Virus record (IMG/VR): IMGVR_UViG_3300036770_007539
Coordinates: 237,008 to 301,007 of that record
DNA: 64,000 nt
Direction: 5' to 3' (one strand)
Under the pieces are notes generated by a model. That model made no database searches. It was not told where the DNA came from and worked only from the letters and a program-made list of their open reading frames with translations. Made by a program: the position numbers and the translations under genes. Within the stretch, counting starts at the first letter, position 1, and each line of letters begins with the position of its first letter. Below, one piece after another: positions 1,318 to 48,461 of this stretch.

Positions 1318-1318
1318 C

Positions 1319-33642: not shown

Positions 33643-33701
33643 TGCGTCGCCAAGGTCCGCTTTCGAGCGGAGGGGGTTCGATTCCCCCGCGACGCACTAC
33701 C
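33643..33701 (+). ncRNA. Anticodon-less tRNA-like element 1
   Basis: TGCGTCGC/GCGACGCA stem; T-arm GGGGG-TTCGATT-CCCCC. Confidence 0.7.
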
Positions 33702-33761
33702 GCGCCAGACGGATTCTGGTGTTTCTCGAATGGGGGACATATGTCCCCGGAGGATAAGAGC

Positions 33762-34496
33762 ATGATGAAAAAGTACAATATTGCCGCGAAGTCCGCTCCC
33801 GCTCCCGCCCCCGCCGCCGCCCCCGTCGCCGCCGCCGTCCTCGCCGCCCCGGAGAACCCGGGCGTGTGGTTCGACCTCCACATCACGCGATTCAAAGAGG
33901 TGGGTTGCTCGGCTCGGGGCAACTTCGCGATGGTGCCGTCGGGCACCGTCGCGATCCTAGGGGCGAGCGACTACGAAGTCGGAGACGCCCTTTTGTCATA
34001 CGACTTCGATCGGGAGGGGCACACGCCCCTCAGCACCGCCCTCTCGCTCCGCATCTGGGCGGACCACACGTGGTGGGGAAAGGAATACCTCAAAGGCTGG
34101 GGCGCCGCCGCCCGCCGAAAGGCGGAGCGGATCTTGAACGACCTCGCGACGCCCGGTGGTAGCGACGAGGAGGACTACCCGGCATGGGTAGCTGCTGCAA
34201 AGCAGTATACTCTCTACTGCTTCCCCCCGTTCGACTTGTATCAGCGTATTCTTGTTGTGGAGTCTGACAGGTGCGGGTTCATAACCGCCCGCGTCGACGA
34301 GCAGCATCCGGATGAGAGCAAGCCCATGCACGGGGGCTGGCTGGTGCTTGCCCTTGCTCGAACGCAAGACCTGCCATCCAAGACCCGCCAAGCATGGGAG
34401 ATGTGCTCCCCGCTGTGGAGGGCGAGAGCCCTCGAATACATCCGTATGGTTGGATTTAAGGTTACGCCAGGAAGTTTCCTGGCTGATCTGGTCTGA
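33762..34496 (+). CDS. Hypothetical protein with an Ala/Pro-rich N-terminal linker
   Basis: RBS and ATG after a structured leader; 244 aa. Confidence 0.65.
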   Translation: MMKKYNIAAKSAPAPAPAAAPVAAAVLAAPENPGVWFDLHITRFKEVGCSARGNFAMVPSGTVAILGASDYEVGDALLSYDFDREGHTPLSTALSLRIWADHTWWGKEYLKGWGAAARRKAERILNDLATPGGSDEEDYPAWVAAAKQYTLYCFPPFDLYQRILVVESDRCGFITARVDEQHPDESKPMHGGWLVLALARTQDLPSKTRQAWEMCSPLWRARALEYIRMVGFKVTPGSFLADLV

Positions 34497-34538
34497 CCTG
34501 TCTCCCCCGCGCTCCCCTTCGGGGTCGAGCGCGGGGGC

Positions 34539-34611
34539 GTGCATCGCTTTGGAGTCTCGTTCCCCCGCAAGGGGGAACGAGGAGGGGGTTCGATTCCCTC
34601 ACGATGCACCA
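34539..34611 (+). ncRNA. Anticodon-less tRNA-like element 2
   Basis: GTGCATCG/CGATGCAC stem; TTCGATT T-loop; ends ACCA. Confidence 0.75.
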
Positions 34612-34898
34612 TGAGGAACATTCGTTCCTCCCGTTGTCGGACGGATTCCGGCTTCTCGTTGGGGCGCTCGCGCCGCCGAGCGGGAGGCGTTCCGCGCTTC
34701 CCTTCGCGGCGATGAGCGCCGTGAGGGGAATCGCGGTCGCCGCCTCGGCGACCGCGACGTCATCTGACCCATCTGCCCCTGGCTCCCCTCGCAAGAGGGT
34801 CGAGCCGGGGGCATCACCCCGAGGAACATTCGTTCCTCACCCTGACCGGAGGGTGTCCGGTGCTTCCAAGGGGATGAATGTCCCCGGAAAGGATTCTG

Positions 34899-35111
34899 AT
34901 GACCATCGGCGAGGCGGTCGACCGCCTCGTCTCGGAGGGGTACAACCCCGACCGAGACGACCTCCCCGCATGGGCAAAGGGGAAGGGGTTCCGACAGGAA
35001 CTCCGGACCCTCCCCTGCGGGGAGGAGTGCTGCGGGCAAGGGTACGCCCTTGTCCGCGGCAACGACGACGAGGAGGAGGAGCGGTTCATTCCGCTTCCTC
35101 CTCTCTTCTGA
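34899..35111 (+). CDS. Hypothetical protein with CGEECCG motif (paralog of 40796..41086)
   Basis: AAAGGA RBS; shared motif. Confidence 0.6.
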   Translation: MTIGEAVDRLVSEGYNPDRDDLPAWAKGKGFRQELRTLPCGEECCGQGYALVRGNDDEEEERFIPLPPLF

Positions 35112-35163
35112 GACTCGCCCCTGGCTCCCCTCGCAAGAGGGTCGAGCCGGGGGCATTTTTTCT

Positions 35164-35408
35164 GCGCTACATTGGCTATTTGGAGATCTAGTGTATTCGA
35201 AGCCGTACTATAAGAAATATTCTTCTTTCAATGACTTCTTTTTCTTTTCTCTTTTCCAAGAAAGAGGGGGGAGGGGGAGTCAATGAAAAAAAATCTTCTT
35301 TACAAGAGGCTTTACCTTTCTTTTTAGAGATCATGTTTCTTCGAAGCCAGTGCAGGTCTGACATTTCTAATCAATCGTTCGTTTTATTACTCTCTTGATA
35401 GCTAGGGC
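35164..35408. repeat. AT-rich spacer element 1
   Basis: GCGCTACATTGGCT ... AGCCAGTGCAG ... GCTAGGGC. Confidence 0.75.
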
Positions 35409-35433
35409 ATATTGTCGTGTTTGCGTGCGTAAC

Positions 35434-35535
35434 TTGACAAGTGATGGATCGTTGCTAGTATGTAGGGTGTGAGATGAACGCAAACGAGACAACGCAAGCG
35501 CGCTTGATTGACAAGCGGTGCAGCGGTGCTAGTAT
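35434..35535 (+). promoter_or_regulatory. Tandem sigma70-like promoters, unit 2
   Basis: TTGACA 35434-N16-TAGTAT; TTGACA 35508-N16-TAGTAT. Confidence 0.8.
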
Positions 35536-35819
35536 GCGGTCATCGAAGATTCGACGCAGCATAGGGGCGTCGAGACGAGCCGCCGTTAGCGGTGCTCTAA
35601 CAGAGCAGTCACGGGCTAGCCCGTGAATCGAGCCGGGCGATTCCCGGTGGTGAGCAAGGGATCTTGCGGCTTTGCCGGTTGAAGCCGCAAGATCCCTTGC
35701 CCTTGATAATCTGTGGAAGCTGTGCATAATGGTGTGCATGGCTTTGGGGGTCAATCCCCGCTTTGCCGGAGAGTGTCCGGTAACGTCCAAGGGGACGCAT
35801 GTCCCCGGAAAGGACTTTC

Positions 35820-36185
35820 TTGAACCTCCAAAAGAGGATCGAGGAAGTGGACCAGGCGCTCGCGCGTCTGGTCCAGAGCGAGATCGTCGTCGCGCAGGTA
35901 GTGCTCGACGATCTGATCTACCTCCACCGCCCCGCCAGCCGTCAGCACGTCTTGCGACAGCGGGCGGATCGCCTACTCCAGGATCGGGACTGGCGAGTCC
36001 AGCCGATCCTGGAGCGGCGCGAGCGACTGGAGCGCCTTCGCGGGCTGCTCGTCGCTCGCGCCGCACGCGCCGCAGGTCGCGACACCTGCGGCTACTGTGG
36101 GTGGGACAACGGTCCCATCGACCCCGCCACAGGTCGCGGTCTCAGCCGTCAAGGCTGGGATTGCGGCTATTGCGGGGGGAACTAA
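35820..36185 (+). CDS. Coiled-coil protein with a C-terminal Zn finger
   Basis: CGYCGWD..CGYC; TTG start after AAAGGA. Confidence 0.6.
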   Translation: MNLQKRIEEVDQALARLVQSEIVVAQVVLDDLIYLHRPASRQHVLRQRADRLLQDRDWRVQPILERRERLERLRGLLVARAARAAGRDTCGYCGWDNGPIDPATGRGLSRQGWDCGYCGGN

Positions 36186-36243
36186 CCCTTCTCTCCGCAT
36201 CGTTTCCTCCGCGCTCCCCTTCGGGGTCGAGCGCGGGGGAGGC

Positions 36244-36312
36244 TGCATCTTCTCGCTTGGAGGCGAGCGCCCCTTGCGGGGCGGACGGGTTCGATTCCCG
36301 TAGGATGTACCA
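36244..36312 (+). ncRNA. Anticodon-less tRNA-like element 3 (four-arm)
   Basis: TGCATCTT/AGGATGTA; GG-containing D-like loop; 4-nt-loop middle arm; ACGGG-TTCGATT-CCCGT; ends ACCA. Confidence 0.75.
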
Positions 36313-36380
36313 TGAGAGCTTGTCTCTCCCGCGTCGGACGGATTCCGATTGTCTGCGATCGAGAAAGGAGGACTGTCCAC

Positions 36381-36722
36381 ATGGCACAGTACCTCGGAAA
36401 CGCCTTCTCGCTCGGTATGCTCGATTGTCTCACGGCGGAAACGCCTGTGAGCGTCGAGTGTGCCGCCTTCACGCTCGACGAGGCACGCGCCTACGTCGAG
36501 CACAACCGCCCGACCTCGACGGTCGGGCACCTCGACACGGCGGAACTCTTCTCCGCCATGTTGGGGTCTTCCGTGGAGATGCGCCGCGTCTCCACGTCTC
36601 TGATCGGCGGGGATGAGATCCTCGTCGGTCAATACAACGGTCCGCGTCTTCCGGAGGGGGCGAAGAGCCTCCCCGAGGGCGCCAAGGTCCGCTGGATTCT
36701 GGCGCGCATCGTCGCGCGCTGA
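36381..36722 (+). CDS. acrIII-1: DUF1874 / AcrIII-1-like viral ring nuclease (anti-CRISPR type III)
   Basis: YLGNAFS, TLDEAR, STVGHLDTAELFSAMLG, EMRR, GDEIL, RLPEG match the STIV B116 / SIRV1 gp29 / YddF pattern. Confidence 0.8.
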   Translation: MAQYLGNAFSLGMLDCLTAETPVSVECAAFTLDEARAYVEHNRPTSTVGHLDTAELFSAMLGSSVEMRRVSTSLIGGDEILVGQYNGPRLPEGAKSLPEGAKVRWILARIVAR

Positions 36723-36881
36723 GGGTCCACACTCGCCCCTGGTTCCCCGCAAGGGTTGAGCCGGGGGCGTCCCTTCGGGGGAATATCTTTGGAAACTGCC
36801 TGCAAGTTCTGGCTTGTGGGCAGCTTCGAGGGATTGTCCCTTGACCGTAGCTAGGCGGACACCTAGCATCAGGAGGGTCAC

Positions 36882-37106
36882 ATGACTCTTCAAGAAGCAA
36901 TCCGAGAGGTCCGAGACCTTTCGGGAATCCCGGAGGAGCAGCTGCTCCGGGATTGGAACGAGAAGAAGTGCCAGTCTATGGACTGGCACTTCGACACCGA
37001 GACGGTCGAAGACCGTCTCGGAGAGTTGGTGACGTACTTCTACGTGGAAATCATCCCCGAAGGGGATGGTTTCCGCGTCAGGTCTCGAAAAGAGACCTGG
37101 CGATGA
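36882..37106 (+). CDS. Hypothetical protein
   Basis: AGGAGG RBS; 74 aa. Confidence 0.6.
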   Translation: MTLQEAIREVRDLSGIPEEQLLRDWNEKKCQSMDWHFDTETVEDRLGELVTYFYVEIIPEGDGFRVRSRKETWR

Positions 37107-37413
37107 GCCTCGCCCCCGCGTTCCCCTTCGGGGTCGAGCGCGGGGGCACTCGCGGGTTGAGCCGAAAGGTTCCCCGCTCTGACTTCAGGTGGCTCCGACG
37201 CTGATAACGGCGCGGGTTTGATACCCGCTGGAGGACACAGAACATCCTCCTAGCGAAAAGCCGCAGCGGGGAGTGCTTCCGATTCGGGTTACGGTGCAGG
37301 TTTGAGTCCTGCTCTCCCGCGTCACGGGGGTCGGTTGAGACGCCGCCGAACGGAAGCAACGCCTGATTGCAACAACAATAAAGGGGGCGCATATCCCCCG
37401 GAAAGGATATGGT

Positions 37414-38127
37414 TTGAGGACCATCTGCATCGGCGACATCCACGGATGTATCGCCGAGTTTCAAAAGCTCGTGGAGGTTCTCGCGCCCACGAGCGAGGAT
37501 CGGATCGTCCTGTTGGGCGATCTGATCGACAAGGGTCCAAAAAGCGCAGAAGTGGTTCGCTTCGCCCGCGAGATCGGAGCGACCACCATTCAGGGCAACC
37601 ACGAGGAGAAGGCTCTTCGATGGTTTGCCCACGAGAAGACTCGGATCGCCACGGGGAAGGCGAATCCGATGAGCCCTCCCGAGCACAAGGTTCGGGAGTG
37701 GAACACGATCCCCGCCGATGATCGGGAGTGGCTGGCAGCTGCTCCCGTTTACACGGATCTCGGCTCCGGGTTCCTCGCCGTTCACGGCGGGATGCTGCCC
37801 GGGGTCAAGCCACAAGATCACAAGAAGGGAATCCCCCTCCGCCTGAGGTTCGTCAACGACAAGGGCAAGTTTCTGCCCCTCGACGACGACCACGGCGATC
37901 CTGAGGGAGGTATCCCCTGGTACCAGGTCTACGATGGGGAGCACTCCCTGGTGGTGGGTCACACGGTTCACAGCCTGGAGTATCCCCGAATGGATCGTAT
38001 CGGGGATCGGGTGATCTGGCACCTGGACACGGGTTGCGTTCATGGTGGTCGCCTGACGGCGCTCATCCTGGAGACGCAAGAAGTCGTCCAGGTACAAGCG
38101 TCCCAAGTCTACAAGGCGCGGGACTGA
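37414..38127 (+). CDS. Calcineurin-like metallophosphoesterase (ApaH/PrpE/Pnkp-phosphatase-like)
   Basis: GDIHG, GDLIDKG, GNHE, HGG, GHT, LDTGCVHGGRLTA. Confidence 0.9.
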   Translation: MRTICIGDIHGCIAEFQKLVEVLAPTSEDRIVLLGDLIDKGPKSAEVVRFAREIGATTIQGNHEEKALRWFAHEKTRIATGKANPMSPPEHKVREWNTIPADDREWLAAAPVYTDLGSGFLAVHGGMLPGVKPQDHKKGIPLRLRFVNDKGKFLPLDDDHGDPEGGIPWYQVYDGEHSLVVGHTVHSLEYPRMDRIGDRVIWHLDTGCVHGGRLTALILETQEVVQVQASQVYKARD

Positions 38128-38447
38128 GGCGATTGGATTGTTCCTGCGTTCCCCGCAAGGGTTGAGCGCAGGAACAAGTTTCAAGAAGAAAGGAAGAGGA
38201 AGTGGAAATCTGTATGGTTTCGGGTTTTCCGACTCCTTGCGGGTGTTTTGCCTGCCAGGAGTCGGTGGAGCAGGCGCGCGGTGGCAACTGCCACTGCAGC
38301 GCCTGCTGCAAGGTTCGCTTCGGAAACGAAGCGAACGAAGCGAACGAAGGTTGCCGATGGGAGGCGGTTCGACCGCCTCGTCCTCGGCAGTAGGAATCGC
38401 CCCATCGCGTTCCCCCTTGCGGGGTCGAGCGCGATGGGGATTTTTCT

Positions 38448-38683
38448 GCGCTACATTGGCTATATCTGAGATCTTGACATATTCGTTGCTGATGCAGAAT
38501 CTTTTTTTCTTCAATGATTTTTCTTTTTTCTTTTCTACGGGAGGGAGAAACAAGAGAATCAATGAGCTAAGATATTCTTCAAAAGAAACGACTTGTCATT
38601 TATCTTTTACGAGATCAAACACATTCGGAGCCGATGCAGCTCTGATTCGTTTATCAAACGTTTGTTTAGTTCTCAGCTAGGGC
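38448..38683. repeat. AT-rich spacer element 2
   Basis: GCGCTACATTGGCT ... AGCCGATGCAGC ... GCTAGGGC. Confidence 0.75.
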
Positions 38684-38717
38684 TAGGGTGTTCGTTTCTG
38701 CGTGAATCTGTGCAGCC

Positions 38718-38873
38718 TTGACAACGGGCGGATCGATGCTAGATTGTATGGTGTGAGAGAGAGCAACGAATCGAAACAAGCGAGCGAATGAGCGAACGCA
38801 TAAGCCGCGACGGTAGCGGTTAGCGGGTAGCGGATAGCGCGTAGCTTGACACGGTTGGATTCGCTGCTAGGCT
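38718..38873 (+). promoter_or_regulatory. Tandem sigma70-like promoters, unit 3
   Basis: TTGACA 38718-N16-TAGATT; TTGACA 38846-N16-TAGGCT. Confidence 0.75.
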
Positions 38874-38894
38874 TTCTCATAGAAGGGAGGTTAC

Positions 38895-39200
38895 ATGCAA
38901 CAGATTTGTGGAAGATGCTCCGGAAGGGAGAGTCATTCCTGTTGCCCTGATTGCAGGGGAAAGGGCTGGCTTTCCCGCGCGGACGTTCGCGTTCTTCGCT
39001 TGAAGCAGGCGGCATTCTGTTTGCTTCACGAGAAGGCGCGCGAGCATTGGCTCACGCTGAGTGAGCCGCGTCCGCGCCAGGAGTCCTTCGTGCTGGACTA
39101 CGTGTTCAAGCACGAGCAATGGTACTTCGAGACGATCGTCTCGAAGTTTACCCCGGAGCAGAAGCGCACGCTTCTGCGTCGGTTCCCCTGCAATCCCTGA
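38895..39200 (+). CDS. Hypothetical protein with a DnaJ-type Zn motif
   Basis: CGRCSGR..CPDCRGKG. Confidence 0.6.
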   Translation: MQQICGRCSGRESHSCCPDCRGKGWLSRADVRVLRLKQAAFCLLHEKAREHWLTLSEPRPRQESFVLDYVFKHEQWYFETIVSKFTPEQKRTLLRRFPCNP

Positions 39201-39307
39201 ACCGGGTAGAGCGAGCCCTCGCAAGGGGGCTCGTTCCCTACAACCGGATCTGGATCGTGATTGATCTAGGTTCGATTATAGGGATTACCCCTATTGAAAG
39301 GAGGAGC

Positions 39308-39445
39308 ATGAAGTTTCTGGAAAAGCTCTCGAATCGATTGCCCTACGTCGTTCAAGAGTCCCCGCTCGACCCGATCACTTGGATCTTTGCGGTCCCTTTG
39401 CTGGTCCTTTACGGGATTGGCTACATTGTCGGGGGATTGACGTGA
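39308..39445 (+). CDS. Small membrane peptide
   Basis: GAGGAG RBS; hydrophobic C-terminal half. Confidence 0.5.
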   Translation: MKFLEKLSNRLPYVVQESPLDPITWIFAVPLLVLYGIGYIVGGLT

Positions 39446-39615
39446 AAGACGACTTCCTCGACGATATCATCGCAAAGATCGACTCTCTTCGCATCGAGGA
39501 GTGCGAGAGCGGGGCGATCATTCGCAAGCCGGAGGTGAGCGACTTCAAGCGTCCCTCCCTTCTACCCAAGATCATCAACATGCGATCCTTGCTGGTCGAT
39601 TCTAGCAAGTCGTGA
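39442..39615 (+). CDS. Hypothetical protein
   Basis: GTG start overlapping the upstream stop. Confidence 0.45.
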   Translation: MKDDFLDDIIAKIDSLRIEECESGAIIRKPEVSDFKRPSLLPKIINMRSLLVDSSKS

Positions 39616-39621
39616 ACGGCA

Positions 39622-39687
39622 GCATCCCCTCGTGTGGTTGCGAGCACCTGAAAAGGTGGACAGGTTCGATTCCTGTGGGATGCACTA
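39622..39687 (+). ncRNA. tRNA-like element 4 (compact cloverleaf)
   Basis: GCATCCC/GGGATGC; CTCG-TGTGGTTG-CGAG; CACC-TGAAAA-GGTG; ACAGG-TTCGATT-CCTGT; ends ACTA. Confidence 0.75.
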
Positions 39688-39747
39688 CCGCGTCGGACGG
39701 ATTCCGATATCTCTTGAATGGGGGCAAAGCTCCCGGAAGGATTCTTC

Positions 39748-40131: not shown

Positions 40132-40293
40132 GTTTGGTGTGGTATCGTCCCTGGCTCCCCTCTTCGGAGGGTCAAGCCGGAGGCACCCCTTCGGGTGAAT
40201 ATCTTTGGAGCCTGCTTGCAAGTTTCTTGTAGGCAGGTTCGAGGGATTATCTCTCGACCGATACCGGACGGATATCCGGCAAAGGGAGACATC

Positions 40294-41595: not shown

Positions 41596-41615
41596 GCATC
41601 ACGGTAGGAGGAAGC

Positions 41616-41789: not shown

Positions 41790-41803
41790 AAGGACAAGTG
41801 AGC

Positions 41804-41959: not shown

Positions 41960-42068
41960 GCCGGAATGGGCGAGCCCTTGCGGGCTCGTTCCCTGCAATC
42001 GGACCTGGATCGTCACTGATCTAGGTTCGACTCCAGGGAATCTTTCCTGGTCTTTCGGAGGTGTGTTT

Positions 42069-42530: not shown

Positions 42531-42632
42531 ACTAGGACGGGCGAGCCTGCAAGGGCTCGCTCCCTGCAATCGGGATTCGATACGGATCGAATCTCGATTC
42601 TAGGGAATGTCCCCTAGCAACATGGAGGCTTT

Positions 42633-42890
42633 ATGCCCTTGTTCGTTTCTTTCGAGGATGACAACATCGACCCCACCTACGCCGACGCTTCCGACGCGGT
42701 GATCGTTTCTGCGCTGCACGATGCGGCGTTGGAAACCAATCCGTGTGTGGGTCGCGGAGTGCGGCATCGTGCTCCGGTCGCGCCTCGCACCGAAAAGGAG
42801 ATCATCGCCTTCGCCAAGGTGATGGGATGGCGAACGGAAGGATCGGGGAGTGATCTTGTGATCTACCCCGCTGTTTCCGAGGATGACTGA
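42633..42890 (+). CDS. Hypothetical protein (paralog of 47019..47270)
   Basis: MPLFVSF.D...DPTYA shared. Confidence 0.7.
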   Translation: MPLFVSFEDDNIDPTYADASDAVIVSALHDAALETNPCVGRGVRHRAPVAPRTEKEIIAFAKVMGWRTEGSGSDLVIYPAVSEDD

Positions 42891-42963
42891 TAGGACGGGC
42901 GAGCCCCTTGGCAACAAGGGGCTCGCATCTCTCGACACTCAATCCGAAACGTGAAAGGCTGAT

Positions 42964-43128
42964 GTGGATCCGAAAGAAAAAAAGCAATCTATGTTGGACC
43001 GAATGAACGCGAATAACGCGGAGATTCATCGGAAGATGAAAGAAGCTGCGGAGAAGAATGGGGAAATGGATTCCTCGCTGCGCGAGGCTATTCTCAAGAT
43101 CGGAGCAAAACCCTCTTCGGAGGGTTGA
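42964..43128 (+). CDS. 54 aa hypothetical protein
   Basis: Hand-translated; ends PSSEG inside a repeat hairpin. Confidence 0.45.
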   Translation: MDPKEKKQSMLDRMNANNAEIHRKMKEAAEKNGEMDSSLREAILKIGAKPSSEG

Positions 43129-43185
43129 GCGCGGGCACCAATCGCCGCAAGGTGCGGCGATGATCAAACGTGAAAGGCTGGAATA

Positions 43186-43443
43186 ATGTTCTCGTTGAAA
43201 AATGTTTCAGTTCAGCGGACATTCATCCTGATGATCGGGGATCGTATTCAAGGCGTCGCCAAAAGCGAGCAAGAACTACGCCCCATTGCTAAGGAGGCGT
43301 GGCGTCGGTACGGGGTCGCGCGCCCTCAATCTCCCGGAAAGGTTTTCGTGGTAGAAACCACGATTCCCTTTTTGAAGGGAATCGAATGGGTGGAGACTAC
43401 ACCACCGAAGTTCGTGTGCGATATCGACCTGGATAGTGATTGA
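43186..43443 (+). CDS. Hypothetical protein
   Basis: 85 aa ORF. Confidence 0.55.
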   Translation: MFSLKNVSVQRTFILMIGDRIQGVAKSEQELRPIAKEAWRRYGVARPQSPGKVFVVETTIPFLKGIEWVETTPPKFVCDIDLDSD

Positions 43444-43526
43444 TCCAGGTTCGATGAAGGAAGTTTGAACCACAATGAGAAGCGAGCCCTCGCAAGGGGG
43501 CTTGCTTCCTAGACAAAGGAAGCTCC

Positions 43527-43988
43527 ATGACGTTATCAAGAGATGTCATGATCGAAGCATACAACGATGCGGTGGCAGCAGCATACGGGGCAATCCGTTC
43601 GCGCTGCCCTGTAGAACTGGCTACCGCTGCCGATCTTCTCGCAAAAACTTCACCTTCGGAGGAATACTTCGATAATCACGCCATCACTCAGCACAAGACC
43701 TTGACGCATCACGTCGAGTTTTATCGTGCTCAAGAACGCGACGACGACTTTTTGAATGCTCTGTTCGACGAGTTTGCCGACAATCACGACATGGATCTCG
43801 ACGACGACGACGCAGCTAGTTTCGCTCGTAGTTGTGTAAACAACTACGGCTCGAGCTTTCTTGTTTATCAAGAGGCGCGAGGTTCGTTTCCTGGTGGCGA
43901 ATGTACGGCGGGGGGAATCGCCTCTGCCTGGAATATCATTCGCGATCAGATCAAGTTTGCAAAGAAGGAAAAGGAGGTATTGCCATGA
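43527..43988 (+). CDS. Hypothetical acidic protein
   Basis: AAGGAAG RBS; 153 aa. Confidence 0.6.
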   Translation: MTLSRDVMIEAYNDAVAAAYGAIRSRCPVELATAADLLAKTSPSEEYFDNHAITQHKTLTHHVEFYRAQERDDDFLNALFDEFADNHDMDLDDDDAASFARSCVNNYGSSFLVYQEARGSFPGGECTAGGIASAWNIIRDQIKFAKKEKEVLP

Positions 43989-44398
43989 ACAAGTACGCCA
44001 GCATCAAGGAATACGTCGAAGCTCTCTACCGAGAGGGCAACAATCAGGTTGCGGATACGTTGCAGCGTATCCGTTCGGGCGAGTCCAACGACGTTTCCGA
44101 GGTTTTCAAACCTACGGAAGCTCTCCGAAACGCAGGCTTCGAGGTAATGCCTCAAGAAGTCACCGATCCGGTCCTGGAAGCCTTCGGATTGCGCTCTTTC
44201 GGAGAGGGTGCTTTTGCGGTATACGACATGTATGGTCGAACCCCTTATCACAAGCTCTCCAGTGCGGAGATTCTGGAGCGTTTCCGTGCCAAGACGGTCA
44301 CGCATGAAGTCGATGTTCTTTGCGAGTTTCTTCGCTACTATCTCGAAGGCGTTTTTCGTCGCGCCATGTACGAAGGCGAGCACTATCAAAAGAAGTAA
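43985..44398 (+). CDS. Hypothetical protein
   Basis: AAGGAGG RBS; ATGA coupling. Confidence 0.65.
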   Translation: MNKYASIKEYVEALYREGNNQVADTLQRIRSGESNDVSEVFKPTEALRNAGFEVMPQEVTDPVLEAFGLRSFGEGAFAVYDMYGRTPYHKLSSAEILERFRAKTVTHEVDVLCEFLRYYLEGVFRRAMYEGEHYQKK

Positions 44399-44525
44399 CT
44401 GAATCGTAAGGGCGAGCCTCTTCGGGGGCTCGCTCCCTGCAATCGAATATTGACTCCCGGCATGTTCTGGGATACAGTCGATGTTCGATTCTAGGGAGTT
44501 TCCCCTAGTTTCTTCGGAGGAAAGC

Positions 44526-44735
44526 ATGCGTTGTTTCATGTATGGCGAAGTTCACACGATGGACGGCAAGCGCAAGATGGTGCGACGTTACTTCGACGGA
44601 TCGGGGAACGTCTACGCAGCTGCACTTCAAGAACTTTACAAGCGTAAAGACAAGGGTTCCCCTTGGAGAGGTGATGCAGTCAACGTCATCACTCCTTTGG
44701 GACAGAGGGTGATCGTCGAAGTTCCTCATCTGTAA
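44526..44735 (+). CDS. Hypothetical protein
   Basis: GGAGG RBS after a switch-like leader. Confidence 0.6.
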   Translation: MRCFMYGEVHTMDGKRKMVRRYFDGSGNVYAAALQELYKRKDKGSPWRGDAVNVITPLGQRVIVEVPHL

Positions 44736-44788
44736 CCAATCTCAACACCTGGAGCATGTGTCTAAACTGCTCCTTTCCAAAGGAGAAT

Positions 44789-44914
44789 ATGTCCAAACGC
44801 AAGAACTCCGATGAAGTTCTCGAAGCTCGAATCGCTCATCGTCTCGCCATGATTGCCGCTTTGGAGGCGGAAATCGCGGAACTTCGCAAGCAACAAGGAA
44901 AGGATAACCAATGA
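44789..44914 (+). CDS. 41 aa coiled-coil peptide
   Basis: AAAGGAG RBS; hand-translated. Confidence 0.5.
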   Translation: MSKRKNSDEVLEARIAHRLAMIAALEAEIAELRKQQGKDNQ

Positions 44915-45189
44915 CCGCTCGATCTGCTCGTCGACAGCACTCCAAGTATCTGCGTGAGATGGGTGTGCCCTTCATCATGCGCCAGAGTCTCGCCAAGACT
45001 CGCTACCAAGGATTGATGGATGACCATTACTTGAGTCGAAAAACTCAGCTGGTCACTACCTACTACGACAGCAACGGTTGCGATTGCTGTCCTCCTTCCA
45101 AGATTCAATATTGGGAGGTGGTGGTGCAGAAAAAGACCTATCGAATCCAAACGGAAGATGGTCGAATCCAATCTTGCCTCAAGTTCTGA
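44911..45189 (+). CDS. Hypothetical protein
   Basis: ATGA coupling; 92 aa. Confidence 0.55.
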   Translation: MTARSARRQHSKYLREMGVPFIMRQSLAKTRYQGLMDDHYLSRKTQLVTTYYDSNGCDCCPPSKIQYWEVVVQKKTYRIQTEDGRIQSCLKF

Positions 45190-45237
45190 GGCTTGGGGAC
45201 GCATCTGGGGCTGAACGGTCCTGGGTGCGTCCCCGAA

Positions 45238-45489
45238 GCGCTACATTGGCTCAACAGTGATCTTTGCATGTTCAGAACGTTCTTTATGCAAAAGCATCTT
45301 TTTTCTTTCAATGATTGCTATTTCTTCTTTCAAGTAACGACATGAATAATCAATGAATGACAAGTATCTTTCAAACAAAGAACTTTCAAATCATATATCT
45401 TTTCAACCAGATCTTTGTTCGTTCAGAGCCTATGCAGTCCTGACTTTTTCACTGGCTTTTTGACGGTTTTCGTCCCTTCTGGCTAGGGC
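45238..45489. repeat. AT-rich spacer element 4
   Basis: GCGCTACATTGGCT ... AGCCTATGCAGT ... GCTAGGGC. Confidence 0.75.
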
Positions 45490-45522
45490 TAGATCGCTTG
45501 TTTTCGCGCATATTCGCGCGCC

Positions 45523-45649
45523 TTGACAATCGGCGGATCGTTGCTAGTATGTAGGGTGTGAGAGAGAGCACGAACGAACGAATGAACGAACGAACGCTAG
45601 CACGACGCTAGCGCGATGCGTTTGACGCGGCTCGATTCGATGCTACGTT
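45523..45649 (+). promoter_or_regulatory. Tandem sigma70-like promoters, unit 5
   Basis: TTGACA 45523-N16-TAGTAT; TTGACG 45622-N16-TACGTT. Confidence 0.75.
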
Positions 45650-45683
45650 GCAAGTGTCGCCGATACATGGCGAGGGAGGCAAT

Positions 45684-46157
45684 ATGTGGATTGACCAGCG
45701 CGAGATCGACCGAGAGAACGAGAACTACAGCCTGGAGTCGCACCAGGAGGTAGTTCAGGAACAGGCTCGGAAAGAGATGATCGCGAGCTTGACCAAGCTC
45801 TGGGAGGAGACGGATCGCAAGATCGACGGCAAACGCGAAGCTCTCACGAGTGAGAGCTTCGACGAATACATCCGTCGGATCGCAGATGATAACGCCTATG
45901 AGAAGCGCGAAGCTCTCTCGGAGAAGCTCGGACGCAAACTCACCCGTGATGAGGAGCACGAAATCTTTCGCGAGGAGAAGGATAGCATCATTCAAAAGAT
46001 CAATGGCGAGATCGAGATCCTGGTCGCCAAGCTCGACATGATCGAAACGCAACTTCGCAGCCTGGGTGCTCGCAAGGCACGTCCTTACGAGCACTGGAAC
46101 GAGGAGGAGCACATCGTTCAGTATCTGGAAACCAGGAACGACAACCGCGACTACTGA
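45684..46157 (+). CDS. Acidic coiled-coil protein (paralog of 53676..54170)
   Basis: Shared LGAR..RPYEH.NE.E..YLE.R..NDR C-terminus. Confidence 0.7.
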   Translation: MWIDQREIDRENENYSLESHQEVVQEQARKEMIASLTKLWEETDRKIDGKREALTSESFDEYIRRIADDNAYEKREALSEKLGRKLTRDEEHEIFREEKDSIIQKINGEIEILVAKLDMIETQLRSLGARKARPYEHWNEEEHIVQYLETRNDNRDY

Positions 46158-46212
46158 ACCCAAGATCCCGGCTCGCCCTTCGGGGCGGGTCGGGTTCGAC
46201 AACGGAGGAATC

Positions 46213-46485
46213 ATGGAAAAGATTGCACGAGTGGTTGAGCACCCCGAAGCCCAAAAGTACGACCTGCGATGCAACTATCATCGGGGCGTCCTGGTGGACG
46301 TGCCTTCGGACAAGGTTCTGCGAGGGTACGATGGCGGTCTGTACGCCACCGTGGACGGTGAGTGGTACAGCGTTCATCCGTCCAATACTTCCAACCTGAT
46401 CGGAGCCCTGGGTATTCGATACCAGCTCCGAGAGGAAGGCTCGGAGGGAGACATGATCTCCTTCCTGCAAGCGCAAACCGACTGA
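46213..46485 (+). CDS. Hypothetical protein
   Basis: GGAGG RBS. Confidence 0.6.
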   Translation: MEKIARVVEHPEAQKYDLRCNYHRGVLVDVPSDKVLRGYDGGLYATVDGEWYSVHPSNTSNLIGALGIRYQLREEGSEGDMISFLQAQTD

Positions 46486-46587
46486 TCTGGACGGGCGAGC
46501 CCGCAAGGGCTCGCTCCCTGCAATCGGGATTCGATACGGATCGAATCTCGATTCTAGGGAATGTCCCCTAGCAACGGAGGTATTGTG

Positions 46588-46908
46588 ATGGGCAAACTGG
46601 CAGGATCGATGTGGAGGATCAATAAGTCGAGCATGGTGGTTCCCCTCCAGCCTGTCGAGGACGCGGATGCGTATTGGTTTGGCTATGCTGAACTTGACGA
46701 GGGAGACACGGTAATCATCCTCGGTGAACCGGTCCCCACGGTCGATTCAGACCCCGCTAAGAAGCACCACAGCTACGTCCCTGTCGAGTTTCGTAACGGT
46801 TACGCGCCTTTTTTCGGGTGGCGCAACGGTTATGTGTCCAACTACAAGGGTTACATGAACGCGACCTACTTCATCTGCGAATCTATCTGGATGGAGAGAG
46901 TAGGGTAA
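46588..46908 (+). CDS. Hypothetical protein (SH3-like?)
   Basis: GGAGG RBS after a switch-like leader. Confidence 0.55.
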   Translation: MGKLAGSMWRINKSSMVVPLQPVEDADAYWFGYAELDEGDTVIILGEPVPTVDSDPAKKHHSYVPVEFRNGYAPFFGWRNGYVSNYKGYMNATYFICESIWMERVG

Positions 46909-47018
46909 TATCCAGAACTAGGACGGGCGAGCCCGCAAGGGCTCGCTCCCTGCAATCGGGATTCGACACTTGTCGAGTTTCGATTCTAGGGAATGTCCCC
47001 TAGCACCAAGGAGGCTTT

Positions 47019-47270
47019 ATGCCGCTTTTCGTTTCTTTCCAGGATTCCAGCACCGATCCCACCTACGCGCTCGCCGATGATGTGGTCCTCGTCGAGAGCA
47101 GCGACGACGATGACAACAATCCTTGCGTCGGGCGCTCGGTTCGTCGCACCGCACCCGTCGCTCCGATGACGGCGGAAGAGATTCGCGCTTTCGCTATGGT
47201 CATGGGTTGGTCATGGGAGACGCACCGTGATGGGACACTGGTCCTATCTACGGGCGTCCAAGATATCTGA
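47019..47270 (+). CDS. Hypothetical protein (paralog of 42633..42890)
   Basis: Same leader and N-terminus. Confidence 0.7.
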   Translation: MPLFVSFQDSSTDPTYALADDVVLVESSDDDDNNPCVGRSVRRTAPVAPMTAEEIRAFAMVMGWSWETHRDGTLVLSTGVQDI

Positions 47271-47389
47271 TAGGAAGGGCGAGCCCTCGCAAGGGGGCTC
47301 GCTCCCTGCAATCGAACCTTGATGCCGAAAACATCGGAGCTATGTCAAGGTTCGATTCTAGGGATGTCCCTAGTGTTACGGAGGTTTCC

Positions 47390-47848
47390 ATGAACGACGA
47401 TTATCTGCACGTCAACCAGTTCAGCTTCAACTTCCGCCAGAATCAGTACGAGATCCTGGAACTCAAGGGTGTCAACATCTACGAAGATAGGACCATCTGG
47501 TGCTCTCATGCCGATGATGGGGAAGGCTGGGATGTATTCATCTGCTACCAGCCCGAAGATGACGACAATACTGGGACCATCAATCCTAGCCATCTCAACA
47601 AGTCTTGGGCTAAGAAGTTCAAGACTGAGATGCAAGAAGATCAGGACGGTGAACCCGCTCCTTGGAACATGGGCAGGAATCTGAGCATGAGCGAGGTTCA
47701 AAGCATGGTTCGCTACTTCAGGCGAAAGATACTGGTGGGTGTCCTTCGGCAGAAACGCGACCGTGAACTCGGTTACTGTGACGAGGATCTCAACCGAGAA
47801 AAGTGGTCCAACTACTGGATCGGCGAAGGCTATACCGAATACTACTGA
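47390..47848 (+). CDS. Hypothetical protein (paralog of 52511..52957)
   Basis: Shared GEGWDVFI.Y.PEDDD, SWAKKFKTEMQEDQDG, MVRYFRR. Confidence 0.75.
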   Translation: MNDDYLHVNQFSFNFRQNQYEILELKGVNIYEDRTIWCSHADDGEGWDVFICYQPEDDDNTGTINPSHLNKSWAKKFKTEMQEDQDGEPAPWNMGRNLSMSEVQSMVRYFRRKILVGVLRQKRDRELGYCDEDLNREKWSNYWIGEGYTEYY

Positions 47849-47902
47849 AACAACGCACCTGGGCATGTGTCTAAACTGCCCTTTTCTTGAAAGGAGAATG
47901 TC

Positions 47903-48193
47903 ATGAACAATGATTTTCGTGCTTCCATTCTTGCCGCTCGTGAAGATTGGCGCATATCCAATCTGATCAAAGCAATCCAGTCTCATCTGGACGGTGAGGA
48001 AATCTATCTTCCCCGATTCGAGGAAGATCAGCAGGGCGGTCATTTCGTGCTCTCGGAATGGATCAAGATCCCTGCTTCCCGAATCATGAGAATATTGGGA
48101 GTCGACCATCCCCGCGATTTGGGATGGGGGCGTGATGGTGAACCACCGACTCCGAATCCTTCGGCAATTCCTTTCAAAGGAGAATGTCAATGA
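47903..48193 (+). CDS. Hypothetical protein
   Basis: AAAGGAG RBS. Confidence 0.6.
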   Translation: MNNDFRASILAAREDWRISNLIKAIQSHLDGEEIYLPRFEEDQQGGHFVLSEWIKIPASRIMRILGVDHPRDLGWGRDGEPPTPNPSAIPFKGECQ

Positions 48194-48390
48194 ACGTGAA
48201 TGAGTTTCTGAAAGAGGCATTGGAGCCGCAACCTCAAATGCGCAAGGGGCAGCATTTCATCAATCGTCTTACGGTGGTGAAGCCCTGGCTATCTTACAAG
48301 CTCCAGCAGACAGGCTTGGATCCATACTACGTTGACAGCAAGCTGCCTGCTGCAATCCAATACACCGTAGAAAACTGGGATCTCTTCTAA
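48190..48390 (+). CDS. Hypothetical protein
   Basis: AAAGGAG RBS; ATGA coupling. Confidence 0.6.
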   Translation: MNVNEFLKEALEPQPQMRKGQHFINRLTVVKPWLSYKLQQTGLDPYYVDSKLPAAIQYTVENWDLF

Positions 48391-48400
48391 AAGAGATACC

Positions 48401-48461
48401 GCATCGACTGGTCCGCACCCGCAAGGGTGCGGAGGAGGTTCGATTCCTCCACGATGCACTA
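48401..48461 (+). ncRNA. Anticodon-less tRNA-like element 5
   Basis: GCATCG/CGATGC; CTGGT linker; GCAA hairpin; GGAGG-TTCGATT-CCTCC; ends ACTA. Confidence 0.75.

What the first reader, a model, noticed from the sequence alone, without database searches (positions are those of the whole stretch)
33643..48461. Five intergenic anticodon-less tRNA mimics (mascRNA-like) punctuating phage early genes
Seen: elements at 33643, 34539, 36244, 39622 and 48401 each have a covarying acceptor-like stem (GCATC/GATGC core) and a GG-containing D-like linker or loop. They also have a variable middle hairpin with no valid anticodon loop and a 5-bp T-stem with invariant TTCGATT loop. Four end in ACCA or ACTA; copy 1 has CACTACC. 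Each sits between a stop codon and the next structured leader. Two weaker variants with TTTGATA and TTTGAGT loops lie at ~37190-37320. Known: RNase P and RNase Z recognise the acceptor/T-arm elbow, as in mitochondrial tRNA punctuation and MALAT1 mascRNA. Inference: the phage uses host tRNA-processing enzymes to cut polycistrons, or releases tRNA decoys against anticodon nucleases, RelA-type sensors or other tRNA-sensing defences.
Basis: partly seen in the sequence, partly recalled or inferred. Interest (0 to 1): 0.92.

Follow-up and report, generated by a model that had tools for sequence, protein, structure and literature searches.

The report
Anticodon-less tRNA mimics between phage genes
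Five short RNA elements that copy only the top half of a tRNA sit between genes in the early operons of an uncultured 301-kb phage, and most likely let the host's tRNA-trimming enzymes cut the long messages into separate, hairpin-protected mRNAs, a trick known from plant mitochondria and a human long non-coding RNA (MALAT1) but not found described for phages.

Summary
Five + strand elements (33644-33699, 34541-34611, 36245-36312, 39622-39687, 48401-48461) each have a 7-bp acceptor stem stacked on a 5-bp T stem. Each also has the universal T loop (TTCGATT, G53-C61), a GG-bearing D-like linker or arm, A73 followed by CCA (2 copies) or CTA (3 copies), and a tetraloop-capped middle hairpin in place of an anticodon arm. 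Six of the 12 acceptor and T pairs show compensatory changes. ARAGORN and Rfam call none of them a tRNA, Y RNA, tmRNA or mascRNA.

All five lie inside operons driven by sigma-70-type promoters. A hairpin ends 0-8 nt before G1, and the phage's standard leader hairpins follow the 3' end. The best reading is tRNA-like processing punctuation (a "t-element"): RNase P cuts at G1 and RNase Z or trimming acts after A73. This is inferred, not shown. A decoy against anticodon nucleases is disfavoured because there is no anticodon loop. A decoy for defences that target the acceptor end is not excluded.

The two "weak variants" near 37.2 kb are not supported as members. Related contigs lack the module, but an unrelated IMG/VR phage contig carries at least 8 mini tRNA-like elements between its genes. 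I rate it a new variant of a known kind.

The parts
33644..33699 (+). tRNA-like element c1 (56 nt). Acceptor GCGUCGC/GCGACGC, linker CAAGG, 6-bp hairpin with UUCG loop, T arm GGGGG-UUCGAUU-CCCCC, A73 at 33696, then CUA.
   Evidence: z -3.6; 65.7 bits
34541..34611 (+). tRNA-like element c2 (71 nt). Acceptor GCAUCG(C)/(A)CGAUGC, linker with UUUGGAG, 11-bp hairpin with GCAA loop, T arm with one G-U pair, A73 at 34608, then CCA.
   Evidence: z -5.3; 69.6 bits
36245..36312 (+). tRNA-like element c3 (68 nt). Acceptor GCAUCUU/AGGAUGU (two G-U pairs), D-like hairpin with a GG loop, 6-bp hairpin with UUGC loop, T arm ACGGG/CCCGU, A73 at 36309, then CCA.
   Evidence: z -3.0; 73.2 bits
39622..39687 (+). 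tRNA-like element c4 (66 nt). Acceptor GCAUCCC/GGGAUGC, D-like hairpin with a GG loop, short hairpin with GAAA-type loop, T arm ACAGG/CCUGU, A73 at 39684, then CUA.
   Evidence: z -4.2; 75.7 bits
48401..48461 (+). tRNA-like element c5 (61 nt). Acceptor GCAUCG(A)/(A)CGAUGC, linker CUGG, 9-bp hairpin with GCAA loop, T arm GGAGG/CCUCC, A73 at 48458, then CUA.
   Evidence: z -5.9; 71.5 bits
33606..33643 (+). Strong two-tier hairpin ending at position -1 of c1 (-28 kcal/mol); it contains the upstream stop codon. Proposed protector of the 3' end of the upstream cistron.
   Evidence: (families D10, D14, D20)
34502..34539 (+). Hairpin of the same family ending 1-3 nt before c2 (-30 kcal/mol).
36202..36243 (+). 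Hairpin of the same family ending 1 nt before c3 (-34 kcal/mol).
39582..39613 (+). Weaker hairpin at the end of the upstream ORF, ending 8 nt before c4.
   Evidence: z -1.8
48380..48397 (+). Short hairpin spanning the upstream stop codon, ending 3 nt before c5 (weak).
   Evidence: z -1.3
33702..33754 (+). Leader after c1. A hairpin with CGGAU loop (stem CCAGA/UCUGG, which covaries with UCGGA/UCCGA of the other copies), then a GGGGAC..GUCCCC hairpin, then the Shine-Dalgarno sequence GGAGGA. The start codon is at 33762.
34613..34652 (+). Leader after c2. An extra hairpin GAGGAAC..GUUCCUC directly after CCA, then the CGGAU-loop hairpin.
   Evidence: The same flanking modules without a tRNA-like element occur at 34775-34878.
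36314..36373 (+). Leader after c3. An extra hairpin after CCA, the CGGAU-loop hairpin, and the Shine-Dalgarno sequence AAGGAGGA. The start codon of the B116-like gene is at 36381.
39692..39740 (+). Leader after c4. The CGGAU-loop hairpin, a GGGGGC..CUCCC hairpin and the Shine-Dalgarno sequence. The start codon is at 39748.
48461..48513 (+). Leader after c5. A different hairpin, then the Shine-Dalgarno sequence GAGGUGAG. The start codon is at 48514.
33231..33258 (+). Sigma-70-type promoter of the operon holding c1 and c2. Its primary transcript starts with the same CGGAU-hairpin leader (33286-33340).
35434..35535 (+). Two tandem promoters (TTGACA, 16 nt, TGnTAGTAT) of the operon holding c3.
38718..38745 (+). 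Promoter of the operon holding c4.
45523..45550 (+). Promoter of the operon holding c5.
48898..48935 (+). Intrinsic terminator (17-bp stem followed by a T run) that closes the operon one gene after c5.
37170..37320 (+). Two T-arm-like hairpins (loops UUUGAUA and UUUGAGU) inside a 290-nt structured spacer. They are possible degenerate relatives, not supported as members.

Best explanation
The five elements are cis-acting tRNA 'top-half' mimics, equivalent to t-elements. They are transcribed as part of polycistronic early mRNAs of a 301-kb uncultivated phage.

Shown here:
- They keep the parts of a tRNA that end-processing enzymes read: a 7+5 bp coaxial acceptor/T stack, the canonical T loop, a GG partner for the elbow, and an A73 discriminator.
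- They have replaced the anticodon arm by a stable tetraloop hairpin of arbitrary length.
- They lie inside operons.
- They are bracketed by hairpins.

Inferred:
- Host RNase P cuts immediately 5' of G1. The upstream cistron then ends in a strong hairpin with a 0-8 nt tail, which resists 3' exonucleases.
- In the CUA copies RNase Z cuts after A73. In the CCA copies a downstream endonucleolytic cut is followed by exonucleolytic trimming.
- The downstream cistron then begins with the same hairpin leader that the phage's primary transcripts carry.
- A 53-68-nt tRNA-like RNA (G1 to A73) is released and probably receives or keeps CCA.

The net effect would be to uncouple the stability and expression of neighbouring early genes, as the RNase III sites do in the T7 early region.
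For: - Anatomy and covariation.
- Strand: G-U pairs (c3 G1-U72 and U6-G67; c2 T stem) work only on the + strand, which is the transcribed strand.
- Inside operons: eight near-identical TTGACA-16-TGnTAGTAT promoters on the + strand and T-run terminators lie outside the elements.
- Free bottom half: the middle hairpin is 4-11 bp and the D arm is optional. RNase P, RNase Z and the CCA-adding enzyme use only the top half, so this fits them.
- The GGTTCGATTCC motif equals the GGTTCRANYCC motif used to find plant mitochondrial t-elements. Those are cut by RNase P and RNase Z and receive non-templated C or CCA (PMC1920247).
- A bacterial tRNA-like module with a 7-bp acceptor stem is cut by E. coli M1 RNA and gains CCA in vivo (PMC4201824).
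- Flanking hairpins: -28 to -34 kcal/mol hairpins end 0-3 nt before G1 of c1-c3. Leader hairpins start 2-8 nt after the trailer. The same leader follows a promoter at 33286-33340.
- The module is optional within otherwise identical flanks (34775-34878 compared with c2).
- The phage's own tRNAs do not encode CCA, and one ends ACTA. This fits a host that uses RNase Z plus CCA addition.
- An unrelated phage contig repeats the design at least 8 times between co-oriented genes, with compensatory changes.
Against: - There is no transcript or cleavage data, and the host is unknown.
- In c1 the upstream hairpin pairs right up to position -1, and in c3 up to -2. This could hinder RNase P, which prefers a single-stranded leader.
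- Only 3 of 5 copies have U at -1, and only 2 of 5 have the RCCA motif that E. coli-type RNase P uses.
- Acceptor pairs 1-5 are nearly invariant in sequence. Pure shape recognition does not require that.
- Related contigs manage without the module.
- Only 5 of about 45 junctions carry it.
Confidence: 0.5

Rival explanations
1. The released (or embedded) top-half mimics are the functional product. They would act as small RNAs that titrate or distract a factor reading the acceptor stem, T arm and 3' tail. Candidates are defence effectors that cut or modify tRNA 3' ends, the CCA-adding enzyme, EF-Tu, or a phage protein. Processing would then be only their biogenesis.
For: - Acceptor pairs 1-5 plus A73 are almost invariant while everything else drifts. 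This suggests a partner that reads sequence.
- The elements sit among early genes that include an anti-CRISPR-type B116/DUF1874 homologue directly after c3.
- Defence nucleases exist that recognise only the acceptor stem, T arm and CCA tail. Cas12a3 still cleaves truncated tRNA substrates lacking the other arms (PMC12851939).
- Five copies in strongly promoted operons would give high dosage.
Against: - Three of five copies do not encode CCA.
- Relatives of the phage lack the module.
- No partner has been identified.
- The invariant acceptor could reflect common descent or gene conversion.
Confidence: 0.2
2. They are structural spacers or recombination modules. Stable RNA and DNA repeats between cassettes of small genes would block Rho or exonucleases, or provide homology for shuffling genes. 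The promoter/stem-loop cassettes of T4-type phages do this (own knowledge, not re-read here). On this view there is no specific use of tRNA enzymes.
For: - The early region is built from at least three other repeated intergenic module families that also covary.
- The tRNA-like module is present or absent within identical flanks.
- The nearly identical upstream hairpins of c2 and c3 flank quite different tRNA-like bodies, indicating mosaic exchange.
- Relatives have the same modular style built from other modules.
Against: A generic spacer or homology patch would not need any of the following, all of which are kept through compensatory changes:
- the universal T-loop sequence;
- the G53-C61 pair;
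- a 7+5 bp stack;
- a GG elbow partner;
- an A discriminator.
A second, unrelated phage converged on the same geometry.
Confidence: 0.15
3. They are decayed tRNA genes, or tRNA-derived attP-type fragments, with no function of their own.
For: - They have weak similarity to tRNA-Sec models (19-27 bits).
- tRNA-like attP sites are known in viruses (PMC8707807).
- In the second phage, one copy is still called a tRNA by ARAGORN. This suggests descent from a tRNA gene.
Against: - There are five copies with both halves of the acceptor stem, 96.6% pairing and six compensated pairs.
- The anticodon arm is replaced by stable UUCG- or GNRA-type hairpins, not eroded.
- None lies in the tRNA region (55-59 kb).
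- All five are intergenic, co-oriented and framed by conserved modules.
- No integrase was seen among the ORFs scanned.
- Pseudo-tRNAs in phage tRNA arrays look different, because they keep 7-nt anticodon loops.
Confidence: 0.05
4. They act in translation, as ribosome- or factor-binding tRNA mimics that enhance or gate initiation of the downstream cistron.
For: - In four of five copies the distance to the next start codon is constant (52-68 nt).
- In c2 and c3 the CCA overlaps an AUG.
Against: - There is no anticodon or messenger-like part.
- Each downstream gene has its own hairpin leader and a strong Shine-Dalgarno sequence.
- The ORFs that start at the CCAUG read through conserved non-coding hairpins and have wrong-frame amino-acid composition.
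- The same leader works directly after a promoter without any tRNA-like element.
Confidence: 0.05

Closest known systems
t-elements of plant mitochondria (and the t-elements used in Haloferax to release RNAs)
   Same: Both are non-canonical tRNA-like folds with an intact acceptor stem and the conserved GGTTCRANYCC pseudouridine arm. Both are embedded in precursor transcripts next to mRNA ends. The known ones are cut by RNase P and RNase Z, and the excised element receives C or CCA (PMC1920247; PMC6546412).
   Different: These are in a phage genome. They form a multi-copy paralogous family with a conserved acceptor sequence and a tetraloop-capped middle hairpin. They are framed by dedicated end-protecting hairpins. 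No cleavage data exist for them.
MALAT1 mascRNA / MEN-beta tRNA-like (Rfam RF01684)
   Same: c3 and c4 share the architecture: a 7-bp acceptor, a D-like hairpin directly abutting it, an anticodon-like stem with a short loop, and a 5-bp T arm. As with MALAT1, a stable structure lies immediately upstream of the RNase P site and would become the protected 3' end of the upstream RNA.
   Different: The Rfam score is 26.7 bits against a threshold of 42.5, and only c1 scores, so there is no homology. The setting is bacterial, not nuclear. The upstream protector is a hairpin rather than a triple helix. Both flanks are mRNAs.
tRNA-like domain of bacterial and phage Y RNAs (YrlA)
   Same: It is a bacterial tRNA mimic with T and D arms. 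The M. smegmatis version, with a 7-bp acceptor stem, is cut by RNase P and gains CCA (PMC4201824).
   Different: In YrlA the connectivity is permuted, a Ro60-binding helix is attached, and it lies next to rsr. None of this is seen here, and there is no Rfam Y RNA hit at E up to 10.
RNase III processing sites between the early genes of phage T7
   Same: The logic is the same. Host-promoter-driven early polycistrons are cut by a host RNase at structured intergenic sites, leaving hairpin-protected ends (own knowledge, not re-read here).
   Different: The presumed enzyme (RNase P or RNase Z rather than RNase III) and the fold are different. The other long hairpin families of this window are closer in shape to T7-type sites.
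tmRNA tRNA-like domain
   Same: It is a top-half mimic with an acceptor stem, a T arm and a D loop without a stem, like c1, c2 and c5.
   Different: These have no G3-U70, no messenger part and no pseudoknots. ARAGORN finds no tmRNA.

Membership tests
canonical tRNA (Rfam RF00005, ARAGORN) | Cloverleaf with a 5-bp anticodon stem and a 7-nt anticodon loop | tested here: not met
   The middle hairpins end in 4-6 nt loops (UUCG, GCAA, UUGC, GAAA-type) and their stems are 4-11 bp. ARAGORN calls none of them.
canonical tRNA (Rfam RF00005, ARAGORN) | Score at or above the curated threshold (29 bits) | tested here: not met
   There is no match at gathering score. The best member of the tRNA clan is tRNA-Sec at 19.4-26.8 bits for four copies, with nothing of that kind for c2.
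canonical tRNA (Rfam RF00005, ARAGORN) | 7-bp acceptor stem stacked on a 5-bp T stem, T loop T54-T55-C56-R57-A58, G53-C61 pair | tested here: met
   Met in all five copies.
t-element (tRNA-like processing signal) | Conserved pseudouridine-arm motif GGTTCRANYCC within a non-canonical tRNA-like fold that has an acceptor stem | tested here: met
   GGTTCGATTCC is present in all five copies. The definition comes from PMC1920247.
t-element (tRNA-like processing signal) | Lies within a longer precursor transcript, next to mRNA ends | tested here: inconclusive
   The elements lie between cistrons, downstream of predicted promoters and upstream of predicted terminators. No transcript data are available.
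t-element (tRNA-like processing signal) | Cleaved by RNase P at the 5' end and by RNase Z at the 3' end; excised RNA receives C or CCA | not testable with these tools
   This needs end mapping or in vitro cleavage.
mascRNA-menRNA (Rfam RF01684) | Score at or above the curated threshold (42.5 bits) | tested here: not met
   26.7 bits, E 0.09, for c1 only.
mascRNA-menRNA (Rfam RF01684) | Acceptor, D-like hairpin, short-looped anticodon-like hairpin and T arm, with no linker nucleotides | tested here: met
   Met for c3 and c4. c1, c2 and c5 have a linker instead of a D hairpin.
bacterial Y RNA (YrlA type) | Match to an Rfam Y RNA model | tested here: not met
   No Y RNA family appears at E up to 10 in 33000-49000.
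bacterial Y RNA (YrlA type) | Ro60-binding helix and tRNA-like domain with permuted connectivity | tested here: not met
   The folds have ordinary 5'-to-3' tRNA connectivity and no added helix.
bacterial Y RNA (YrlA type) | Neighbouring Ro60 (rsr) gene | tested here: inconclusive
   No TROVE/Ro60 domain was found among the roughly 50 ORFs scanned. Not every ORF was scanned.
tmRNA | G3-U70 alanine identity pair, tag-encoding messenger part, pseudoknots | tested here: not met
   Pair 3-70 is A-U or G-C. ARAGORN finds no tmRNA. The only tmRNA hit is an 11.9-bit fragment.
tRNA-derived attP site | Single copy next to an integrase; only the 3' part of a host tRNA is needed | tested here: not met
   There are five copies with both acceptor strands and compensatory changes. 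No integrase was found among the scanned ORFs. Identity to a host tRNA was not tested because the host is unknown.

The most novel reading that the evidence does not exclude
Phages have a so far undescribed class of multi-copy, anticodon-less tRNA top-half RNAs. After excision by RNase P and RNase Z and CCA addition, these accumulate as decoys or sponges for host factors that read only the acceptor stem, T arm and 3' tail. Examples of such factors are immune effectors that cut or modify tRNA tails. The conserved GCAUC/GAUGC-A73 acceptor would be the bait. The class recurs in unrelated phages: this window, and IMG/VR contig 3300008110_000072 with at least 8 copies.
Probability: 0.15. Interest if true: 0.9.

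Novelty: new variant of a known kind. Interest (0 to 1): 0.7.

Why it matters
tRNA-like processing signals are textbook for mitochondria and for MALAT1. In the searches made here I found no description of them as repeated intercistronic elements in phage operons.

If the model is right, a phage recruits the host's essential and hard-to-lose tRNA-maturation enzymes to sculpt its early transcriptome. It would thereby turn one promoter into several independently stable mRNAs.

A second, unrelated phage contig has the same design in at least 8 copies. This suggests a general strategy that tRNA finders and Rfam miss today.

The elements are compact (46-71 nt across the two phages) and defined by sequence. 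They could be tested directly with purified RNase P and RNase Z. They might also serve as portable insulators or RNA-release modules in bacterial synthetic biology, as t-elements already do in Haloferax.

Tried and rejected
1. Known RNA families. Rfam at gathering and at E up to 10, and ARAGORN, gave only sub-threshold tRNA-Sec, mascRNA and (on the reverse strand) Plastid-ycf2 similarity.

2. Reverse strand. The Plastid-ycf2 hits on the minus strand were rejected. G-U pairs would become A-C mismatches there, and the genes are on the + strand.

3. Relatives by DNA.
- No match in GenBank phages, in near or distant mode.
- IMG/VR scans with the downstream 15-mer, the promoter and the type II motif returned only the source contig IMGVR_UViG_3300036770_007539, apart from scattered single hits of the 15-mer that look like chance matches.
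- The T-arm-plus-acceptor pattern returned 78 loci. Of these, 66 were ordinary tRNAs and the rest were odd tRNAs in tRNA arrays with 7-nt anticodon loops.

4. Relatives by protein.
- The 244-aa gene between c1 and c2 is an ORFan among 5.8 billion proteins.
- Homologues of the phosphatase gave related early-region contigs L138-L148.
- The single metagenome scan gave L165, L151/L206 and L154.
- None of these has a significant hit to the model.
- L151:2264-2328 is a degenerate copy (15 bits, two G-G mismatches in the acceptor) in a 5' UTR.

5. Host identification through the phosphatase in GTDB genomes gave only 31-37% matches in Myxococcaceae, which is uninformative.

6. The long ORFs that start at the CCAUG of c2 and c3 were rejected as genes.

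7. The weak variants near 37.2 kb were rejected as members.

8. Types II and III intergenic modules were examined as possible tRNA mimics. Their TTCGATT is base-paired in a long hairpin, so they are not.

Full report
**What is there**

The window is part of IMG/VR contig IMGVR_UViG_3300036770_007539, which is 301,007 bp. Several long motifs of the window recur only in that contig. The phage has no close relative in GenBank. A virion protein is about 31% identical to proteins of cyanomyoviruses.

Positions 33-52 kb form an unusually G+C-rich block (50-63%, against about 32% at 1-14 kb). It consists of small + strand genes arranged in operons. Eight nearly identical promoters of the form TTGACA, 16 nt, TGnTAGTAT start these operons, and hairpin-plus-T-run terminators end them. 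The genes are mostly ORFans. Two exceptions are a STIV-B116/DUF1874 homologue at 36381-36722, whose family I recall (not checked here) includes the viral ring nucleases called AcrIII-1, and an ApaH-like metallophosphatase at 37414-38127. Calling the region 'early' is an inference from these features.

**The five elements**

Reading the sequence, a descriptor scan, single-sequence folding and an alignment all give the same picture at these coordinates:
- c1: 33644-33699
- c2: 34541-34611
- c3: 36245-36312
- c4: 39622-39687
- c5: 48401-48461

Each element has these parts:
- A 7-bp acceptor stem. The 7-66 position is mismatched in c2 and c5.
- Either a 4-9 nt linker containing GG (c1, c2, c5) or a D-like hairpin with GG in its loop (c3, c4).
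- One middle hairpin of 4-11 bp capped by UUCG, GCAA, UUGC, a GAAA-type loop or GCAA.
- A 5-bp T stem with the loop UUCGAUU, closed by G53-C61.
- The acceptor 3' strand with no spacer.
- A73, followed by CCA (c2, c3) or CUA (c1, c4, c5).

The fold z-scores are -3.0 to -5.9. On the 12 acceptor and T pairs, 96.6% of cells pair, against 32-58% when partners are slid by 1-3 columns. Six pairs carry changes on both sides, and no shuffle out of 500 reaches the covariation score. Three G-U pairs make the + strand the functional one.

A covariance model of the five finds only these five in the window (66-76 bits). The next hit, at 19 bits, is the 3' exon of a genuine tRNA. The five sequences are paralogues, so a formal covariation significance test is not possible. 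The shuffle test is known to be optimistic for related sequences.

**What they are not**

- ARAGORN finds only tRNA-Lys (55026) and tRNA-Leu (57081).
- Rfam at gathering score adds a group I intron, and none of the five elements.
- At E up to 10 the elements reach only 19-27 bits on tRNA-Sec, where the alignment deletes the D and anticodon arms. c1 reaches 26.7 bits on mascRNA (threshold 42.5). No Y RNA family appears, and tmRNA gives only an 11.9-bit fragment.
- They are not eroded tRNAs. The top half is kept by compensatory change, while the bottom half has been rebuilt differently in each copy into very stable hairpins.
- Unusual tRNAs and pseudo-tRNAs that the model picks up in other phages' tRNA arrays keep 7-nt anticodon loops and sit among tRNA genes.
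- The two 'weak variants' at 37170-37236 and 37267-37320 contain T-arm-like hairpins. They score 10.6 and 9.2 bits and fold no better than shuffles in one case. I do not count them.

**Context**

Every element lies inside an operon. It starts 6-59 nt after a stop codon. For four copies it ends 52-68 nt before the next start; for c2 the gap is 266 nt.

Upstream, c1-c3 have a conserved two-tier hairpin (-28 to -34 kcal/mol) that ends 0-3 nt before G1. c4 and c5 have weaker hairpins ending 8 and 3 nt before G1.

Downstream, c1-c4 are followed within a few nucleotides by a hairpin with the loop CGGAU, whose stem covaries (UCGGA/UCCGA against CCAGA/UCUGG). In c1 and c4 a G-rich hairpin then abuts the Shine-Dalgarno sequence. 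c2 and c3, the CCA copies, have one extra hairpin directly after the CCA.

The same leader occurs directly after the promoter at 33231. The same flanks occur without a tRNA-like element at 34775-34878. The tRNA-like unit is therefore an optional module in a modular intergenic architecture.

The other junctions carry two further covarying RNA families:
- Type II has 8 copies: a 12-bp hairpin followed by a long bulged hairpin.
- Type III has 3 copies.
In these the TTCGATT string is base-paired, so they are not tRNA mimics.

**Mechanism**

What is conserved is exactly what the end-processing machinery reads: the 12-bp acceptor/T stack, the T loop, its GG partner and the discriminator. What those enzymes ignore is free to vary.

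Three precedents support cleavage:
- Plant mitochondrial t-elements are found by the same GGTTCRANYCC motif. They direct RNase P and RNase Z cuts that create mRNA ends, and they receive non-templated C or CCA (PMC1920247).
- t-elements are used in Haloferax to release defined RNAs (PMC6546412).
- A bacterial tRNA-like module with a 7-bp acceptor stem is cut by M1 RNA and gains CCA in vivo (PMC4201824).

I therefore propose the following:
- RNase P cuts at G1, leaving the upstream cistron with a 3' hairpin.
- RNase Z cuts after A73 in the CUA copies. CCA is an anti-determinant for RNase Z (own knowledge), so c2 and c3 would need a downstream cut plus trimming.
- The downstream cistron then starts with the standard hairpin leader.

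The phage's own tRNAs lack an encoded CCA, and its intron-containing tRNA-Leu(UAA) ends ACTA like c1, c4 and c5. This fits a host that matures tRNAs by RNase Z and CCA addition.

All cleavage steps are inferred. Points against the model:
- A base-paired leader up to -1 or -2 in c1 and c3.
- Only 3 of 5 copies with U at -1.
- The unexplained near-invariance of acceptor pairs 1-5.

**Rivals**

A role as decoys against anticodon nucleases is disfavoured, because there is no anticodon loop. A decoy or sponge for factors that read only the acceptor end is compatible with the conserved acceptor sequence and with the anti-defence neighbourhood. Such effectors exist: Cas12a3 recognises the acceptor stem, T arm and CCA tail and still cuts truncated tRNAs (PMC12851939).

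A pure spacer or recombination-module role does not explain the maintained tRNA geometry. An attP-type origin (PMC8707807) does not fit five copies that each have both strands of the acceptor stem.

**Distribution**

The gene between c1 and c2 is an ORFan. Contigs that share the phosphatase (57-61% identity) or several early genes show the same style: small genes with repeated promoters and hairpins. L165 is an example, with up to 95% nucleotide identity over one gene. None of these contigs has a significant tRNA-like element. One contig (L151, identical to L206) keeps a degenerate copy in a 5' UTR. The module is therefore young or easily lost in this lineage.

A scan of IMG/VR for a GCAA hairpin next to a T arm mostly returned type II tRNAs. 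It also returned an unrelated, low-G+C phage contig, IMGVR_UViG_3300008110_000072 (65 kb; loci L216 and L266). That contig has seven complete copies plus one cut off at the locus end, so at least 8 copies of a 46-78-nt mini tRNA-like element.
- Each copy has a 7-bp acceptor, a short or long middle hairpin, and a T arm with the loop UUCGAUU or UUCGAAU.
- Each is followed by a palindrome.
- The copies sit between co-oriented small genes.
- Compensatory changes occur in both stems.
- One copy is still called a tRNA by ARAGORN.
- There is no Rfam match.
A further single copy lies in another contig (L333). The design therefore recurs independently in phages.

**Verdict**

The elements are new members of the functional class of tRNA-like processing signals, in a setting (phage operons) that my literature searches did not find described. 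The mechanism is plausible and directly testable, but unproven.

Noticed in passing
L216 and L266 (IMGVR_UViG_3300008110_000072), e.g. L266 minus strand 2121-2066, 1428-1362, 1020-972, 353-306; L216 minus strand 6214-6169, 5739-5694, 3712-3635; L333:8840-8866: An unrelated low-G+C phage contig carries at least 8 mini tRNA-like elements without an anticodon. Each has acceptor UCCGGAG/CUCCGGA, a T arm, G73 and CAA, and is followed by a palindrome. They lie between co-oriented small genes. Compensatory variants occur, and one copy is still called tRNA-Phe(AAA) by ARAGORN. Rfam has no family for them.
   Followed up: partly
window 59106-59398 (+): A tRNA-Leu(UAA) gene interrupted in the anticodon loop by a group I intron (Rfam 59.9 bits at 59131-59336). 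This arrangement is typical of cyanobacteria and plastids. ARAGORN misses it. It ends with A73 followed by CTA.
   Followed up: partly
window 36381-36722 (+): The gene directly after element c3 matches Pfam STIV_B116-like/DUF1874 (26.3 bits against a cut-off of 26). By my recollection this family includes viral ring nucleases that act as type III anti-CRISPRs. A homologue (69% nucleotide identity) is in the related contig L165.
   Followed up: partly
window 39200-39307, 41950-42068, 42521-42632, 44400-44526, 46475-46584, 46907-47018, 47263-47389, 50660-50802 (+): Type II intergenic RNA family, 8 copies. A 12-bp GC hairpin is followed by a long bulged hairpin with six covarying pairs, which ends at the Shine-Dalgarno sequence. 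Some copies contain a TTGAC -35-like box. They may be RNase III-type processing sites or internal promoters. The motif also occurs in related metagenome contigs L151, L154, L165 and L206.
   Followed up: partly
window 36735-36881, 40145-40294, 40645-40795 (+): Type III intergenic RNA family, 3 copies. A hairpin, then a roughly 30-bp composite hairpin, then a CGGAUA-loop hairpin before the start codon. Seven pairs have double changes.
   Followed up: partly
window 32684-32984: About 24 tandem copies of an 11-nt unit (GATAGAATAGG; period close to one DNA helical turn) lie just upstream of the first early promoters. The 30-32 kb stretch before it has an extreme GC skew (-0.67).
   Followed up: no
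window 1-64000: G+C content differs very sharply within one phage contig: about 32% at 1-14 kb, 42-47% at 14-30 kb, 50-63% at 32-52 kb, and about 40% after 52 kb. The high-G+C block coincides with the densely structured early operons.
   Followed up: no
window 37414-38127 (+): An ApaH-like metallophosphatase in the early region. It is the only early gene with many homologues (up to 71% identity in metagenomes) and was used to find relatives. A second metallophosphoesterase lies at 55247-55966, next to tRNA-Lys.
   Followed up: partly
window 24632-25561, 25695-27785, 27801-29921 (-): Three neighbouring genes have concanavalin-A-like lectin domains. Two of them have long collagen triple-helix repeats. 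They are probably fibres or receptor-binding proteins.
   Followed up: no
L151:2264-2328 (same sequence as L206:4011-4075): A degenerate homologue of the tRNA-like module: GCAA hairpin, perfect T arm, 3' GGGAUGC, but two G-G mismatches in the acceptor. It sits about 50 nt downstream of a -10 box, inside a larger multi-hairpin 5' UTR of a related metagenomic phage.
   Followed up: partly
window 34775-34814 and 35117-35156 (+): Two 100% identical 40-nt copies of the two-tier hairpin flank the 77-aa gene at 34878-35111, like the boundaries of a cassette.
   Followed up: no
window 487-2245, 3922-4647, 5258-5959 (-): Genes for a 5'-3' exonuclease, a UvdE UV endonuclease, a sugar nucleotidyltransferase and a NUDIX hydrolase lie in the low-G+C part.
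   Followed up: no
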